From Hormiphora californensis (lineage: Eukaryota; Animalia; Ctenophora): a DNA stretch of 64,000 bases. Shown here in pieces: positions 28,286 through 34,641 of this stretch. Both the position numbers and the translations under genes were made by a program. The stretch covers positions 7,378,001 to 7,442,000 of the forward strand of contig CM035357.1 in the NCBI GenBank assembly GCA_020137815.1. Reading direction: 5' to 3'. The notes below the pieces were generated by a model. It was not told where the DNA came from and did no database searches. It saw only the letters and a program-made list of their open reading frames with translations. Numbering within the stretch: position 1 is the stretch's first letter; every line of letters begins with the position of its first letter.

Positions 28286-28358
<73 letters not shown>

Positions 28359-28367
<9 letters not shown>

Positions 28368-28466
28368 AGAGTTTTGTCAGCTGCCACCACCGCCCAGTGG
28401 TTCCCCTCGGTAACACTCATGCACGACCACCCTGTTAGTGTATGAGTGGCTGAGAGTGGTATTGAC
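28359..28466 (+). ncRNA. Candidate HDV-like self-cleaving ribozyme at the retrotransposon 5' end
   Basis: Hand-folded nested double pseudoknot. P1 GAGGGGG(28359-65) or GGGGGGA(28362-68) / TCCCCTC(28402-08); P2 TGCCAC(28382-87) / GTGGTA(28456-61), extendable with GTCAG/TTGAC; P3 ACC(28389-91) / GGT(28399-401); 7-nt L3 GCCCAGT; P1.1 CC / GG(28409-10); P4 CACTCATGCAC(28414-24) / GTGTATGAGTG(28438-48); J4/2 GCTGA with candidate catalytic C28450. Confidence 0.7.
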
Positions 28467-29543
28467 ACTTTATTTCTGAAGGTCAACGATGAGTACTCTC
28501 ATCATAGTAGAGAACACTCTACGCTCCTAACCCACCCAGCTTCCCAGGTTTTTCTTAACTAACTCCACAGCTTATTATGTCACAAGTAAAGAGCCTACGT
28601 CCTATATCTCCCCAATTGACCGGTAGTGTTTCACTGGACCCTTGGTAAGATTGTTCCTAATTGTTGCTAATATTGATTCTGCTGGTTATTAAAGCACATT
28701 TCAACAGATGTATCTCCATGTTCCCTATCCCCAGCAGTCCCAAGGGCTAAGGTCCACACCTCCCATACATACCCTACCGGACAAGGTCCCAGCACCCAGG
28801 AGCATAAATCGAAAAACAAACAAAAAACTGTAAAAGAAGGATAAAATTGTTATAGATGCGATGGAGCGCGTAAACCTCTGTAGGCAATATATAGTCTTAG
28901 GTACATAAACACCTGTAAAACCAAATATAACACTACAAAAAATCTATAAAACAAAAAAATCATTAAAAGATGTAAAACAAAACAAAAAATCATAAAACCC
29001 TGCAAGACCGCAAAACCAAATAAAAATGTTAAAAACAGTTAAAAACCCAGCAGATTATAAAAGATGATTTAAATTAATTCAGACATACCTTGCCAACCTG
29101 TTCAATGGAAATTCAAAGTACTAAAGTATTTGTCACTATGCCCCCATCTTTGGTTAGGCATTGTACAAGTGGCAGGCATCTTACGCCACCTTGCTCAGCT
29201 TGGCACCCCTTGTAATATACAACTAACCCACTCTCATCTCCTTGTCTGTCTTCTTTTTCCCCTATATCGGTCTTGCATCCCTTTCAAATCCTTTCCCAAT
29301 CCTAACGTGGTGCCTCGTGCCGACAGGATGTATGGTTACGGGTTAGAAGTAACCAATAACGAAGGCTACTACGGGGGCGTAATTCCCCCGGCTCTGGGTG
29401 AGCGGGGCAACGGCCAGAGCAGTTTTTCTCCCTAGCGTATTATCCAGGTGGACGCATGTCCACCGATTACTGATTAGAAATATCTATATGGTAGTTGGTG
29501 AATCGTTGAAACTCAATCTTATTGTTATTATATAATTGTTAAT

Positions 29544-32500
29544 ATGTCATCTTTATCCTCATCCCGTACTAAGTGGTCGGAGGCTGATAACATTTGTTTG
29601 TTATTTTGTCACCATAGAAGCCGACCAGGTACGGCTGGGGTCTGGAAAAGACTAGAACGGCTATGGGAGGATGCGGGCCATCCCCACAGAACTGGTAAAG
29701 CCCTAGCCGGACAAGTCCGATCCATCATGAATTCTTCAAAAATGATTTCCGATTCAAAAAAATTACAAATCCAGTCTATAGTCCAGTCGGAATTATCTAA
29801 TCCTTTGTCATCAGGTCCTCTACCCTTATCAATCCCTAGTGAGCACACAGACACTTTCACAGATCTCACTTCACCTAGTCCTGCCGCAGGGCTGTCAGCG
29901 GCCGTCACAAGTCCTACACAGTTAACCACCCCACAGCCCACTGTCACCTTCACCACTGATTTACCCCCAGACCCAACCCCACAATCACTTACACAGTCAC
30001 CCCCGCCCCCATCTTCACAGCCACACCCGCCCCCACCTTCACAGTCACCCCCACCTTCACAACCACCCCCACCTTCACAGTCACCCTCACAATCATCCCC
30101 ACCCCCACACGCACAGTCACCCCTATCTCCACCACAAGCTACACCTCCCCTGGCTCCATTGCCACAGACTACAGAGAGTACTACCCAATCAAATCGAATC
30201 ACATGGTCACACGACATGATCACACTTCTCATCCAGTTGCATTGGCAGTCTGAACCGAACAGGAGAGGTATATGGAATCGTGTGGCCTTAAAATGGAACA
30301 CCCATCCTGCTCACCACCCTACTCGCACCGCTTCACAGTTAAGTACTCAGTTTCGCTACACTACCCAGTCCGGGCGCTTATCTGCCCAAGTCCTCAACGA
30401 GATCCGGACTGCAATCGAACCAACGGTGCCAGTCAGCCCAGATGCAATTCACGACAATAACGTCAACCCCCACCCACCTCACACCCCACAAGCACCCGCC
30501 CGTCCTGTTCAGCAACCACATTCCCGCCACACTCGACCCCCCCGTGAGTACAACACCCAACTTACGGAAGCCCAGATTGTGTCTGTTAAAGAGAAACTAA
30601 TTGATCTCATGGATGATCCCTCATCGATCAAAGTCAAGGATCTAAGACACCGAAGGTGGAAGGACATACGGGACGAGATAGACCACATCACACCAGCCAT
30701 TGTACGCATCCCTACACCCACACTCACATCACTCAACACACTACTCCTAGCTGTTGCTCACACTGTCAGGGATAGAATTGGTGAACCTCCTCCGCGGGAT
30801 GCAGATTCAGATTCTCCTAATGCCAATACCAAGAAGGTTAAAGCTCCGTTGTGGAAACGCAGACTAGATCGGTCCGTCCTCCTACTGCGGGGAGATCTTT
30901 CCAGGTTAACGGAAATGTCACAAGGTAAACGGCTAAAGGAGTCTACCCAGTTGGAGCTTAACCGTCGGTATCCCCTACTTAAGTGTAAAGGTCTCCCTAC
31001 CACCATCGAAGAGGTCAAACAGCGTCTCTTGGCCAAATCTGCGAAGATAAGGAGATACAACAAAAAATCGCAGACATATCGGCAGAACCACCTCTTTGAG
31101 ACCCACCAGCGTAACTTTTATAGATCTTTAGGCAACCCTCCTGATCCAGCAACAACACAACTTGCTGCAGAGGCGGATCCGGAGGAGTACACCGGTTTCT
31201 GGGGAGGCATTTGGGGAAGCGAGATGGGGTACAACACTGAAGCCGATTGGCTACCCACAGTTGAAACAGAGATGAATACAGTGGTGCCCCAGCCCGATTT
31301 CTCAATTGCCCTGGAAACAGTTGCCGCCCGAGTCAAAGGGATGAGCAACTGGACCGCCCCCGGAATCGATGGCCTCCACGGATTCTGGCTCAAGCACGTT
31401 TGTTGTCTTCATAGCCGGTTGGCTACTCTCATTTCAGAGAGTCTTCTTACTGGTAATATACCTAGCTGGATGACCGAAGGAAGGACCTTCTTACTTATGA
31501 AGGATCCTGGTAAGGGATTCCATGATCCGAGCAACTTCAGGCCTATTACATGCTTACCTAACATCTGGAAGCTTACCACAGGCATCCTTGCAGACCAGAT
31601 TTATTCGCACCTAGACGCTAACGGGCTCTTCCCGGAGGAACAAAAAGGATGCAAACGGAACAGCCGGGGATGCAAAGAGCAGCTCCTTATTGATAAATTG
31701 ATCCTTAGGCAAGCTAAGAGACTTAAGCGATCTGTTCACATGTCCTTTATCGATTACAAAAAGGCCTACGACTCGGTCCCTCACTCTTGGATCTTAGATT
31801 CTATGTCACTATGCAAGATACACCCGTCCATTATTTCTTTCTTTAGAACTTCCTTTTCCCAGTGTTCCGTAAATCTTTTCCTTAGCGGCAGAGACCTAGG
31901 TAAGGTCCCCATCAAGCGTGGTCTGTTCCAGGGTGATTCAGTCTCCCCCATACACTTTATTATTGCCCTTATCCCCCTATCTTATCTTCTGAGCCGCTCT
32001 GACTCTGGTTTTAAAGTTCTCTTACCATCGGGCGATGAAACCAATATCAATCACCGCCTATATATGGACGACCTGAAACTATATGGCCGCAGTGCTGCTG
32101 AGCTTAGCTCACTCCTAGAGGTCACTGCTAAATTTAGCAGAGACATCAACATGGAGTTTGGACTGAGTAAATGTGGTACTGTGCATGTGGTGAATGGCCA
32201 GAGAGTAATACTGGACGGCATATCCCTTCCGGATGGTTCTGCCCTCCCTGAAGTCGAGGAAGGGGGTTATAGGTATTTAGGTATTTTAGAAACTGATATT
32301 ATCCTTAATAAGCGTATGAAAGAGATTACTTCCACGGAATATTTTCGCCGTATTAAACTGCTCCTTAAATCCTCTCTTACTAGCAGAAATCTTATTACTG
32401 CTATAAATAGTTGGGCGGTCCCAGTTATCAGATACGGTGCAGGTATTCTGTCCTGGACAGTAACGGAGACTAAGGGTCTTGATACACAGACACGTAAACT

Positions 32501-33537
32501 ACTTCGCAAATCGGGTGCCATCCACAGCCAATATAGCGATGTGGATCGTCTTTACGTCAGCCGGAAAAGGGGAGGTAGGGGTCTCCAACGCATGGAAGAT
32601 GTTATCGTTAGAGAAGAGGTAGCGTTGACTTCATTTTTCAATGACTCTAACGATTCTAAACTTCAGAGCCTCTTCTCTGCGATGAACGTCGAAGGTATGC
32701 TTCTTAGGGATCCAGAGGACGGAGAGGTACTTAAATTGCAACACGAGAACCGGTTGATCGATATGTGGAAGGCTAAACCGGTTCATGGCAGGTTCCTGCA
32801 ACAGTTAGAGGAGGGCGGGTGTTCTCTGAATGAAACTTGGTCCTGGCTCCTTAAACAGAGCATGCCAAAGAATACAGAAGCAGTCATATTTGCTGCTCAG
32901 GACCAGGCTCTACCAACTAATTGGTTACGAGCAATCATTCAGAGAGCGGCTGATACTTCTCCGCTGTGCAGAATCTTGTCGTGAACACAATGAATCGGTG
33001 GAGCACATACTTAGCAATTGCCAAAAGCTAGCTAACTCTGAATATAAACAACGGCATGATCGAGTTGCGGCTGCGATACATTGGGGTATGTGTATCGATT
33101 CTGGGTTCGAGACTACCACTCCTTGGTTTCTTCATTATGCAGAAAAGGTACTAGAGAATGAACGCTATAAGATCTTATGGGACTTCCTTATCCAATGTGA
33201 CAGAACTATACAGGCCTGTAAACCTGATTTGGTGCTTGTTGACAAACGGAAGAAGGAAGCGATTATCGTGGATGTGGCTGTGCCAAAAGAACGGCTTGTT
33301 GCAGATCGAGAAATCGAAAAGGTTCAGAAGTACCAGGAGCTCCGGAGAGAAATCCAGAGCATCTGGGGGTTATCTAAGGTAACGGTCGTGCCTATAGTAA
33401 TAGGCACGCTCGGCGGTGTAACGGATAAACTCCCAGAGTATCTATCCCGGTTGACCAAACGCATCTCGTCTTCCCAGTTGCAGAAAACTGTCCTATTCGC
33501 ATCCTCTAATATTCTGAGGAATTTCCTTGACATGTAA
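29544..33537 (+). CDS. R4/Dong retrotransposon protein: 2 Myb-like domains, Pro-rich linker, RT, CCHC zinc knuckle, RLE nuclease; one +1 frameshift near 32976
   Basis: RT motifs NWTAPGIDG, NFRPITCL, EEQKGC, FIDYKKAYDSVPH, RGLFQGDSVSP, LYMDDLKLYG, YRYLGI, RLYVSRKRGGRGL. Removing one T at 32976-32977 gives CRICREHNESVEHILSNC, then RHD, KILWDF, KPDLVLVDK, DVAVP, EKVQKY (~1330 aa). Confidence 0.92.
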
Positions 33538-33550
33538 AATTGTTATTTTG

Positions 33551-34360
33551 TAGTCTAAGTTAAGTTTTGGGCACAGAGGATTGTAATAACTATTTCCCTG
33601 TCCGCTTTCAGTTCCACTTTTCTTAGTGACGTCAATCCTCTGCGCCCATATGTTTTAATTTTTCCGGAGCCCAAGAGAGTGGTTTAGGCAGGTAGCTTCT
33701 CGCTCGCTCCCCTTTCGTTCTCTAAACCTGTCGTTCCCTTCTTGGGCTCCTCTCTAGCTCTAGACTTCTTTATGTTTATATTGTGTCAACCGACTTCAGT
33801 GGTATTTGGGGCCTATATCGTTATGTCCATCTAGTGGCTGTGGGTAGTTTAAGTTAAGCTTTGGGCACAGTGGGTTGTAATAACTATGCCCCCTTTCCGC
33901 TTTCAGTTCCACTTCCCTAGTGACGTCAATCCCCTGTGCCCACTTGTATTTGTTTCCGGAGCCCAAGAAAGCGGTTTAGGCAGGTAGCTACTCGCTTCCC
34001 TTTCTTTCTCTAAACCTGCCGTTCCCTTCCTGGGCTCCACCCTAGCGTTAGACTTCTTTATGTTTCGATGTTATCTGACCATTGTTGGTATTACTATAGC
34101 GGCTGTGAGTAGTTTAAGGTAGGATTTGGGCACAGTGGGTTGTAATATCTATCTCCCTGTTCACTTTTAGCTCACTTTCTCATAGTAACGTCAACCCCCT
34201 GTGCCCACATGTTTACTTTACGGGGCACAAGAGAGTGGTTTAGGCAGGTCGTCTCCTCTCCGCTCCTCTGTCCCTTGGGTACGGGTGCAGAACTCGGACC
34301 CTTTCTCTCCTAAGCCTGCTGTTCCCCTCTTGTGCCCCTCCCTAGATGTAGAGTTTTCAT
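33551..34360 (+). repeat. Three tandem ~265-295-bp structured repeats in the retrotransposon 3' UTR
   Basis: Units start at 33551, 33845 and 34110. Each has hairpin A (TGGGCACAG...CTGYGCCCA) and hairpin B (GGRGCMCAAG...CYTGKGCYCC). Confidence 0.88.
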
Positions 34361-34597
34361 TTTGTGTGTCCCTATGTTTATTAAATATTTTATGTACTCA
34401 TTATGGCGGGGTAACATCCTTTTTAATCGAGTTCATTATCATTCTGCTACCCTTATATCTCCCCGCCCTTCTGGGTTCCGTTGTTATCTTTATTCAGGTA
34501 CCCCCTTTTTCCTTAGGTGTGACAATGCATCCGGAATTAGGGGATCTTACCTGTCCGAGGCGGGCTCACGCCCGCCGTCGGATAGTGCGTGTATTCG

Positions 34598-34641
<44 letters not shown>

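What the first reader, a model, noticed from the sequence alone, without database searches (positions are those of the whole stretch)
28359..28466. HDV-like ribozyme fused to the (GA)n target at the 5' junction of an R4/Dong retrotransposon
Seen: right where the (GA)n tract ends, the sequence satisfies all five helices of the HDV fold in the correct order (P1 7 bp, P2 6 bp extendable, P3 3 bp, 7-nt L3 with CC, P1.1 GG directly after P1', 11-bp P4, J4/2 GCUGA with C28450). Established: HDV-like ribozymes release R2 and several other non-LTR elements from host co-transcripts, and in some R2 elements P1 is built partly from target DNA. Inference: one P1 register (GAGGGGG, 28359-65) uses the last GA of the microsatellite, so the cleaved RNA would start with target-derived bases. 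A promoterless element could then exploit any read-through transcript across the genome's abundant GA repeats. Caveats: L3 begins with G rather than the usual U, and J4/2 has G where A is usual, so this copy may be slow or dead.
Basis: partly seen in the sequence, partly recalled or inferred. Interest (0 to 1): 0.88.

Follow-up and report, generated by a model that had tools for sequence, protein, structure and literature searches.

The report
HDV-like ribozyme heading a (GA)n-specific retrotransposon
The first ~100 bases of this jumping gene can fold like the hepatitis-delta-type self-cutting RNA that related jumping genes (R4, Dong, R2) use to trim themselves out of host transcripts, so it is a plausible new example of a known trick, not a new one.

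Summary
The fold is in the sequence as described, at 28359/61-28461. It sits at the junction between a (GA)36 tract and a 6.2-kb retrotransposon encoding a reverse transcriptase (RT) and a restriction-like endonuclease (RLE). The motif alone is weak evidence: my descriptor hits shuffled windows 0.47 times per 128 kb. The context is what supports it.

- A sister family in the same genome (RT 61-64% identical, about 100 copies) starts after (GA)n with the same layout.
- P1, P3, P1.1 and the P2 core are conserved. P4 has an unrelated sequence but still pairs, with one A-U/G-C swap between subfamilies. J4/2 reads GCU(A/G)A.
- This core is the only nucleotide similarity between the two 5'UTRs.
- The Rfam HDV model gives a weak hit on the sister family only.

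HDV-like ribozymes at the 5' ends of R4 and of (TAA)n-specific Dong are published and cleave in vitro, so this is a new member of a known kind.

Loop L3 lacks the canonical U/G pair (G/G here), so the copy may be slow. Cleavage was not tested.

The parts
28289..28360 (+). (GA)36 microsatellite, the upstream half of the target site
   Evidence: Tandem Repeats Finder; sequence
28361..28367 (+). P1 5' strand, a run of 7 G. The predicted cleavage is 5' of G28361. Alternative registers start at 28359 or 28362.
   Evidence: the G-run register is shared with sister family B
28368..28381 (+). J1/2. Positions 28376-79 (GUCA) can extend P2 by pairing with 28463-66.
28382..28387 (+). P2 5' strand, UGCCAC. 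C28388 is unpaired or pairs with G28454.
28389..28401 (+). P3 hairpin: ACC, then L3 (GCCCAGU), then GGU. L3 C28393 and C28394 form P1.1. L3 positions 1 and 6 are G/G where HDV has U/G.
28402..28410 (+). P1 3' strand UCCCCUC (28402-08), followed by the P1.1 GG (28409-10)
28411..28448 (+). J1.1/4 (UAA) and P4, an 11-bp stem with a 13-nt loop
   Evidence: family B has an unrelated 14-bp helix at the same place
28449..28455 (+). J4/2, GCUGAGA, with the candidate catalytic cytosine C28450
   Evidence: family B has GCUAA or GCUGA
28456..28466 (+). P2 3' strand GUGGUA (28456-61) and the P2 extension (28463-66)
28467..29543 (+). The rest of the 5'UTR. It has no nucleotide similarity to the family B 5'UTR.
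29544..32984 (+). ORF of 1146 aa, with a Pfam RVT_1 reverse transcriptase domain at residues 662-913
32830..33537 (+). ORF in the +1 frame carrying the CCHC motif and the PD-(D/E)xK restriction-like endonuclease. In relatives it is continuous with the RT ORF. In this copy the frame is broken at about 32970-32985.
33538..34600 (+). 3'UTR, including three tandem units of about 260 bp (33551-34360)
34601..34641 (+). (GA)20 microsatellite, the downstream half of the target site

Best explanation
Positions 28361-28466 are the 5'-terminal HDV-like (nested double pseudoknot) ribozyme of a (GA)n-specific, RLE-type non-LTR retrotransposon of the R4/Dong kind (element 28361-34600).

Inferred mechanism:
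1. The element has no promoter of its own and is transcribed as part of a longer host transcript that runs through the GA tract.
2. The RNA folds co-transcriptionally, and the cytosine at 28450 catalyses cleavage at the base of P1, at or next to the (GA)n/G-run boundary.
3. The released RNA starts with the G run and keeps the folded ribozyme at its 5' end.
4. The RT/RLE protein then nicks another (GA)n/(TC)n tract and copies the RNA in by target-primed reverse transcription.

Shown here: the fold, its position, its homology and pairing conservation in a sister family of about 100 copies, and the sharply defined 5' ends.

Inferred: catalysis, co-transcription and the exact cleavage site.

This particular copy is not autonomous, because the frame is broken between RT and RLE. 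It also carries G/G instead of U/G at the L3 pair, so it may cleave slowly.
For: - All helices are present and in the right order. This is the only descriptor hit in 128 kb, and it lies exactly at the element's 5' junction.
- Sister family B in the same genome has RT 61-64% identical and at least 20 open frames of about 1230 aa.
- The core pattern occurs 104 times in the genome against 4 for the reversed control.
- Of 98 fetched copies, 82 show (GA)n followed by a G run. The run is 7 G in 44 copies and 6 G in 18.
- A compared with B: the P1 5' strand, P3, P1.1 and the P2 core are identical. The P1 3' strand differs at two positions that only swap G-C and G.U. One P2 pair is G.U in A and G-C in B. 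P4 is unrelated in sequence but forms a helix in both families.
- Subfamilies B1 and B2 differ by a compensatory A-U to G-C change in P4: 62 G / 34 A opposite 60 C / 35 T.
- The core (nt 3-50) is the only nucleotide similarity between the two 5'UTRs.
- With the core fixed, a random downstream sequence completes the fold in 0.65% of shuffles for A and 0.55-0.6% for B.
- Rfam RF00094 (HDV ribozyme) is one of three weak hits on family B (15 bits, E 4.2). It aligns P3, L3 and the GG as drawn, and P1 two bases further in, i.e. in the third register.
- Published precedent: the R4 and Dong 5' ribozymes cleave at the junction, Dong with (TAA)7 upstream (PMC3774820). The R2 core CCUCCUCGUGG resembles B's CCUCCUAUCGG (PMC5035012).
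Against: - There is no experimental or read-level evidence of cleavage. The RNA data were assembled contigs, which cannot show RNA ends.
- Rfam finds nothing on the window copy even at E<=10. The hit on family B is far below the gathering score.
- Strict covariation is thin: one double-sided change, and otherwise only G-C/G.U swaps or invariant pairs.
- The families come from a single genome. Cross-species 5' ends could not be fetched.
- The conserved J4/2-P2' block is not significant on its own: 147 of 500 shuffles score as well.
- The nested MFE fold has a z-score of only -1.44.
- L3 lacks the U/G pair conserved in all natural HDV. G/G is 470-fold slower in HDV, and the second A copy's G/U is inactive there.
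- J4/2 has G where HDV has A.
Confidence: 0.78

Rival explanations
1. The conserved 5' core is a functional element of another kind that merely can be drawn as an HDV fold. Candidates are an internal promoter or initiator, or a binding site for the element's protein used in 5'-end joining.
For: - The core is conserved between families while strict covariation is thin.
- My descriptor is only moderately specific, at 0.47 hits per shuffled 128 kb.
- The sharp 5' ends at the G run would equally fit a fixed transcription start.
- The L3 and J4/2 deviations argue against a fast ribozyme.
Against: - This does not explain why an unrelated helix sits at the P4 position in both families, followed by GCU(A/G)A and a strand complementary to P2.
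- It does not explain the compensatory change in P4 or the weak Rfam HDV hit on family B.
- The related R4 and Dong elements are shown to use ribozymes at this position.
Confidence: 0.12
2. The family does carry a genuine ribozyme, but the window copy (family A) is a catalytically dead relic whose fold is preserved only by descent.
For: - Only two A copies exist in the genome.
- This copy has a broken frame, and the other is riddled with stop codons.
- L3 is G/G here and G/U in the second copy, which is the inactive combination in HDV.
- Rfam gives no hit on A.
Against: - G/G retained measurable activity in HDV.
- Family B, clearly successful, also lacks U/G (it has U/U), so this lineage tolerates non-canonical L3 pairs.
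- Proteins 91-100% identical to the A ORF, some with full-length frames, occur in environmental assemblies.
- A-like RNA contigs occur in oligo-dT marine metatranscriptomes, so the family is alive somewhere.
Confidence: 0.35
3. The fold is a chance look-alike with no biological meaning.
For: - About a third of shuffled windows contain at least one descriptor hit.
- Rfam gives no hit on the window copy.
Against: - The hit lies within 0-2 nt of the element's 5' junction.
- It is homologous to about 100 copies of a sister family that keep the fold.
- Local shuffles gave 0 of 4000 hits.
Confidence: 0.03

Closest known systems
Dong (Bombyx mori) 5' HDV-like ribozyme; Eickbush and Eickbush 2013, PMC3774820
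   Same: Both are R4-lineage, RLE-type elements that insert into a microsatellite, with the ribozyme at the extreme 5' end and cleavage at the microsatellite/element junction. RT relatives of the window ORF at 40-46% identity are flanked by (TAA)n, which is Dong's target.
   Different: The target here is (GA)n rather than (TAA)n. The 5' sequence is unrelated to the Dong 5' end quoted in that paper's primer. P1 here is a G run that can slide. Dong was shown to cleave in vitro, and this element was not tested.
R4 (Ascaris) and R2 5' ribozymes; Ruminski 2011, Eickbush 2010 and 2013
   Same: Same HDV-like double pseudoknot at the 5' end of an RLE element transcribed as a co-transcript. The R2 core CCUCCUCGUGG (PMC5035012) is close to family B's CCUCCUAUCGG. 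As in R2, P4 is highly variable. The nearest solved proteins are R2 proteins.
   Different: The targets of R4 and R2 are rDNA, not a dispersed microsatellite, so their co-transcripts come from Pol I rDNA units. Here they would have to come from whichever host genes carry GA tracts. Many R2 ribozymes cleave 9-36 nt inside the 28S sequence, whereas here the shift into the target is at most 2 nt.
Hepatitis delta virus genomic and antigenomic ribozymes (Rfam RF00094)
   Same: Same helix order and lengths: P1 of 7 bp, P3 of 3 bp, L3 of 7 nt with CC forming P1.1 with GG, and J4/2 reading GCU(A/G)A. In family B the stretch ACC-UCCU..C-GGU ... GG-GCAAC matches the HDV core, and it gives a weak RF00094 hit.
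   Different: The L3 U/G trans pair, invariant in natural HDV, is G/G in the window copy and U/U in family B. The first P1 pair is G-C rather than G.U. J4/2 is CUGA where HDV has C(G/U)AA. Scores are below the Rfam threshold.
Kibi, the (TC)n-specific non-LTR elements of fish; Kojima and Fujiwara 2004, via PMC3812793
   Same: Both insert specifically into the GA/TC dinucleotide microsatellite.
   Different: That review lists Kibi among the APE-type elements, and from memory it belongs to the Tx1/L1 group. The window element has a C-terminal restriction-like endonuclease. The review text I searched for Kibi does not contain the word ribozyme.

Membership tests
HDV-like self-cleaving ribozymes | Nested double pseudoknot with strand order P1, P2, P3, L3, P3', P1', P1.1, P4, J4/2, P2' | tested here: met
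   All strands were found in this order at 28361-28461. The same order holds in the sister family, where 80 of 98 copies pass a relaxed descriptor.
HDV-like self-cleaving ribozymes | Cytosine in J4/2 at the catalytic position (C75/C76), followed by N-R-A | tested here: met
   C28450 lies in GCUGA. Family B has GCUAA or GCUGA. Its catalytic role was not tested.
HDV-like self-cleaving ribozymes | P1.1: two C-G pairs between L3 and the two nucleotides that follow P1' | tested here: met
   C28393 and C28394 pair with G28410 and G28409. These positions are invariant in A and B.
HDV-like self-cleaving ribozymes | U/G trans (reverse wobble) pair within L3 (U20/G25, or U23/G28 in antigenomic numbering) | tested here: not met
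   The window copy has G/G, the second A copy G/U, and family B U/U. In antigenomic HDV, G/G and U/U keep 1/470 and 1/290 of the rate, and G/U is inactive (PMC3386971).
HDV-like self-cleaving ribozymes | Pairings supported by covariation among homologues | tested here: inconclusive
   There is one compensatory pair in P4. The whole P4 helix is replaced between A and B. P1 and P2 show G-C/G.U swaps. P3 and P1.1 never vary. All sequences come from one genome.
HDV-like self-cleaving ribozymes | Match to a curated covariance model (Rfam) | tested here: not met
   No hit on the window copy at E<=10. RF00094 scores 15 bits against a gathering score of 50 on family B. Because family B, which has HDV-like P3, P1.1 and J4/2 sequences, also fails the threshold, this negative result has little weight.
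HDV-like self-cleaving ribozymes | Site-specific Mg2+-dependent self-cleavage giving a 5'-OH product | not testable with these tools
   Only assembled RNA contigs were available, and these cannot show RNA ends.
R4/Dong lineage of RLE-type non-LTR retrotransposons | Single ORF with RT followed by a CCHC motif and a PD-(D/E)xK restriction-like endonuclease, with no APE domain | tested here: met
   RVT_1. CCHC and KPD...D...K lie in the +1 frame ORF and are continuous with the RT ORF in relatives. The nearest solved structures are R2 proteins, for both the RT and RLE parts.
R4/Dong lineage of RLE-type non-LTR retrotransposons | Insertion into a specific repeated target, with the target sequence on both sides | tested here: met
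   (GA)n flanks both sides of the window element. It lies directly upstream of 82 of 98 sister copies and at the 3' end of the relatives L053 and L055.
R4/Dong lineage of RLE-type non-LTR retrotransposons | Phylogenetic grouping with named R4 or Dong reference proteins rather than R2, NeSL, CRE or HERO | not tested
   No named reference was available. The support is indirect. Relatives at 40-46% identity are flanked by (TAA)n, like Dong, while R2 proteins match only at E 1e-21.

The most novel reading that the evidence does not exclude
P1 in this lineage is deliberately slippery. A run of 7 G faces 4-5 C flanked by U, so the ribozyme can cleave at two or three adjacent sites. In family A the U at 28407 (C in family B) lets P1 recruit the last GA of the target. 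The released RNA would then start with target-derived bases that could anneal to the (GA)n site when the 5' end is joined. The lineage would also be a natural, successful HDV-like ribozyme family that works without the supposedly indispensable L3 U/G pair, using U/U or G/G instead.
Probability: 0.2. Interest if true: 0.55.

Novelty: new member of a known kind. Interest (0 to 1): 0.4.

Why it matters
- It would extend the ribozyme-processed, promoterless life style of the R2, R4 and Dong elements to a lineage that targets the most abundant microsatellite of its host. This 64-kb window alone holds 50 GA/TC tracts of 8 or more units.
- The host is apparently a comb jelly, according to an earlier scan note that I did not check.
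- Because GA tracts are scattered through genes rather than confined to rDNA, the element could use any host transcript. This makes the family a convenient system for asking how co-transcribed retrotransposons are expressed.
- The family also offers natural L3 variants (U/U, G/G, G/U) of the HDV active site. For enzymologists these would be a ready-made test of how essential the U/G metal-binding pair is.
- None of this changes the known picture of how such elements work.

Tried and rejected
- Rfam at gathering and permissive thresholds on the window, on family B and on 12 metagenome loci found no ribozyme family, apart from the weak RF00094 hit on family B. I judge the negative result to carry little weight, because family B, which has HDV-like P3, P1.1 and J4/2 sequences, also fails.
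The single metagenome scan returned 80 RT relatives, but the (GA)n-type contigs (L053-L057) stop short of the 5' end. Neither the strict nor the relaxed descriptor hit any of them on the sense strand.
- The (TAA)n-type relatives do reach their 5' ends but show a different conserved pseudoknot-like structure that I could not assign to the HDV fold.
- RNA evidence: four marine oligo-dT metatranscriptome runs hold A-like contigs at 90-99% identity over the 5'UTR and ORF. Contigs cannot show ends, and the GA and G-run region was skipped as repeat.
- The core pattern in viral contigs gave two chance matches in GC-rich coding DNA.
- The nested MFE fold of the window copy recovers P2 and P4, but its z-score is only -1.44.
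- The conserved J4/2-P2' block is not significant as a free local alignment.
- Degenerate own-genome RT hits at 36-53% identity, where checked, carry the family B core, so they are not an independent third family.
- Ruminski 2011 and Webb 2009 are not held in the paper library.

Full report
**What is at the site**

A perfect (GA)36 tract (28289-28360/61) runs directly into seven G's (28361-67). Downstream lie:
- a 1.18-kb leader;
- an ORF of 1146 aa (29544-32984) with a Pfam RVT_1 domain (E 3.3e-24);
- a 235-aa ORF in the +1 frame (32830-33537) with a CCHC motif and a KPD...D...K restriction-like endonuclease (RLE) motif;
- a 3'UTR with three tandem units of about 260 bp;
- a second (GA)20 tract at 34601-41.

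In relatives the reverse transcriptase (RT), CCHC and RLE parts form one ORF. In this copy the frame is broken at about 32970-32985. The nearest solved structures are R2 proteins, for both the RT part (E 1e-21) and the RLE part (E 2e-3). The element (28361-34600) is therefore an RLE-type non-LTR retrotransposon sitting inside a GA microsatellite.

**Checking the fold**

The descriptor required:
- P1 of 7 bp;
- P3 of 3 bp;
- L3 of 6-8 nt, with positions 2-3 pairing with the two bases after P1';
- P2 of at least 5 bp;
- a P4 helix;
- C-N-R-A in J4/2.

It finds nothing else on either strand of the 64-kb window. Helix by helix:

| Element | Coordinates and pairing |
|---|---|
| P1 | GGGGGGG with UCCCCUC, 5 G-C and 2 G.U |
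| P2 | UGCCAC with GUGGUA |
| P3 | ACC with GGU |
| L3 | GCCCAGU |
| P1.1 | CC with GG |
| J1.1/4 | UAA |
| P4 | 11 bp |
| J4/2 | GCUGAGA, with C28450 |

The descriptor is not highly specific. Block-wise dinucleotide shuffles of the window give 0.47 hits per 128 kb, and 41 of 120 shuffles have at least one hit. A hit somewhere in the window would therefore mean little. What matters is that it lies within 0-2 nt of the element's 5' junction. Local shuffles of 28368-28470 never reproduce it (0 of 4000). Rfam gives no HDV-family hit on this copy at gathering scores or at E<=10. The nested MFE fold recovers P2 and P4 with an unremarkable z-score of -1.44, as expected for a pseudoknot.

**Comparative evidence within the genome**

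The exact family (A) has only one more 5' end in the 110.7-Mb assembly, 95% identical. Its changes are confined to J1/2 and one L3 base.

The RT, however, finds a sister family (B) at 61-64% amino-acid identity, with at least 20 open frames of about 1230 aa. I fetched 5 kb upstream of 20 of these. Fourteen begin directly after a (GA)n tract with a G run followed by the same layout.

A core pattern spanning P2/P3, L3, P3' and P1' occurs 104 times in the genome, against 4 for the reversed control. Of 98 fetched copies:
- 82 show (GA)n followed by a G run, with 7 G in 44 copies, 6 in 18, and a range of 4-10;
- 80 pass a relaxed descriptor that allows one mismatch near the base of P4.

Family A compared with family B:
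- The P1 5' strand, P3, P1.1 and GCCAC/GUGG of P2 are identical.
- The P1 3' strand is UCCCCUC in A and UUCCCCC in B. The two differences only exchange G-C and G.U.
- One P2 pair is G.U in A and G-C in B.
- J1.1/4 is UAA in A and GCAA in B.
- P4 is unrelated in sequence and length (11 bp against 14 bp with one mismatch) but is a helix in both.
- J4/2 is GCUGA in A and B2, and GCUAA in B1.

Subfamilies B1 (about 35 copies) and B2 (about 60) differ at the second P4 pair by a compensatory A-U to G-C change: 62 G / 34 A opposite 60 C / 35 T.

In a BLAST comparison of the two elements from the G run to the RT, the only similarity within the two non-coding leaders (1.18 kb and about 1.8 kb) is nt 3-50, the ribozyme core.

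With that core held fixed, shuffling the next 200 nt completes the fold in 13 of 2000 trials for A, 11 of 2000 for B1 and 12 of 2000 for B2. The P4 sequences of A and B are unrelated, so these are close to independent events.

On a 155-nt slice of a B copy, the Rfam HDV ribozyme model RF00094 is one of only three weak hits (15 bits, E 4.2). It aligns P3, L3 and the GG as I drew them. It places P1 two bases further in, which is the third register.

Honest limits:
- The J4/2-P2' block (11 of 12 identical to B2) is not significant as a free local alignment.
- P3 and P1.1 never vary.
- All sequences come from one genome.

**The cleavage register**

The P1 3' strand is 4-5 C flanked by U, and it faces seven G's followed by A. 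P1 can therefore slide.
- In B, starts at G1, G2 and G3 give -10.6, -11.4 and -11.6 kcal/mol.

It is impossible in B, where it would give an A x C mismatch.

The modal 7-G 5' end of genomic copies fits cleavage at the (GA)n/G-run boundary. The many 6-G and 5-G copies could reflect slipped registers, but this is an inference.

**Likely activity**

By my 7-nt L3 alignment and by the Rfam alignment, L3 positions 1 and 6 correspond to the U/G trans pair that is invariant in natural HDV.

| Sequence | L3 positions 1/6 | Effect of this pair in antigenomic HDV (PMC3386971) |
|---|---|---|
| Window copy | G/G | 470-fold slower, still active |
| Second A copy | G/U | inactive |
| Family B | U/U | 290-fold slower, still active |

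G/G and U/U are two of only four mutant combinations that retained activity in all 16 tested. It also suggests that the lineage lives with a non-canonical pair. J4/2 CUGA, with G where HDV has A, is shared with B2, the most numerous subfamily.

**Relatives elsewhere and expression**

The protein database holds 752 relatives at E<=1e-20. One is 100% identical, others are 91% and 75-76% identical, and the hits include Anolis RT proteins at about 44%.

A metagenome scan returned 80 loci.
- The 63% and 53% relatives L053 and L055 end in (GA)n, but these contigs lack 5' ends.
- Most 40-46% relatives are flanked on both sides by (TAA)n, which is the target of Dong. This is indirect support for the R4/Dong assignment.
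- The 5' ends of the (TAA)n relatives carry a different conserved structure that my descriptors and Rfam do not recognise. I leave this unexplained.

Marine oligo-dT metatranscriptome contigs cover the A-type leader and ORF at 90-99% identity. This is compatible with transcription but says nothing about RNA ends.

**Comparison with what is known**

Eickbush and Eickbush 2013 (PMC3774820) state the following:
- HDV-like ribozymes sit at the 5' ends of R4 (from Ruminski 2011) and Dong.
- Dong RNA with seven upstream TAA repeats self-cleaves at the junction.
- In many R2 elements P1 is built partly from upstream 28S sequence.
- P4 is highly variable, and few core nucleotides are fixed.

Kojima 2016 (PMC5035012) gives the conserved R2 core CCUCCUCGUGG. 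Family B has CCUCCUAUCGG.

GA/TC-specific elements known to me from the literature (Kibi; PMC3812793) are listed there among the APE-type elements, not the RLE type. The one paper in the library that mentions both ctenophores and HDV-like ribozymes reports only an R2 family.

An earlier scan note calls this genome a comb jelly. I did not verify that. First readers had already flagged other copies of the same motif in this genome. s1-874991 coincides with my copy L190, and s1-875051 describes a ribozyme-headed (GA)n-associated retroelement.

**Verdict**

The interpretation as an HDV-like 5' ribozyme of a (GA)n-specific R4/Dong-like element is well supported structurally and comparatively, but it has not been shown to be catalytic. 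The use of target bases in P1 is possible but unproven.

It is a new member of a known kind. The new aspects are the target, probably the host phylum, and the non-canonical L3. The mechanism is the known one.

Noticed in passing
L064, L070, L074, L076, L077, L084, L088, L090, L098, L101, L112 (first ~150 nt after the (TAA)n tract); also L073, L093/L095, L120, L126, L130: (TAA)n-flanked, Dong-like relatives in marine metagenome contigs share a conserved 5' structure. The extreme 5' end pairs with a strand that follows a hairpin carrying an 8-nt loop (RUUGRYRU), and the stem of that hairpin covaries. A second helix (CCAGU with ACUGG) would make this a pseudoknot. The structure has no CC/GG P1.1 and no obvious J4/2 C. 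Rfam and my descriptors find nothing. It could be a divergent 5' ribozyme or pseudoknot.
   Followed up: partly
98 own-genome copies L133-L230 (5' junctions): The G run at the 5' end varies from 4 to 10 G, with 7 the most common. Some junctions carry tandem duplications of internal ribozyme segments. L161 has three copies of the J4/2-P2' piece between (GA)n and the G run, and L175 and L224 duplicate the J1/2-P2 segment. These may be template-switching products at 5' joining.
   Followed up: partly
window 33551-34360: There are three tandem units of about 260 bp in the 3'UTR of the element. Another first-reader note (s1-875090) also flags them.
   Followed up: no
window 32970-32985: The frame shifts by +1 between the RT ORF and the CCHC/RLE ORF. 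Relatives have one continuous ORF, so this copy is not autonomous as it stands.
   Followed up: partly
whole window: There are 50 (GA)n/(TC)n tracts of 8 or more units in 64 kb (13 GA, 37 TC on the + strand). No other dinucleotide repeat reaches that length, so the element's target is extremely abundant.
   Followed up: yes
L033:567-659: A near-perfect 90-nt AT-rich foldback lies about 1 kb upstream of a family B copy. It draws several sub-threshold Rfam miRNA-precursor hits of 34-48 bits on both strands. It is probably an unrelated palindromic element.
   Followed up: no
window 28459/28460 in run X1: One metatranscriptome contig carries a 16-nt palindromic insertion just after the P2 3' strand. 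It is probably an assembly fold-back artefact or a population variant.
   Followed up: no
own genome C4:1150627, C11:4126660, C1:5200597, C4:47160, C4:5117163, C3:1852214: A second group of RT genes, 24-26% identical to the window RT, has open frames of up to 1212 aa. These belong to another non-LTR lineage in the same genome. I did not examine their 5' ends for ribozymes.
   Followed up: no
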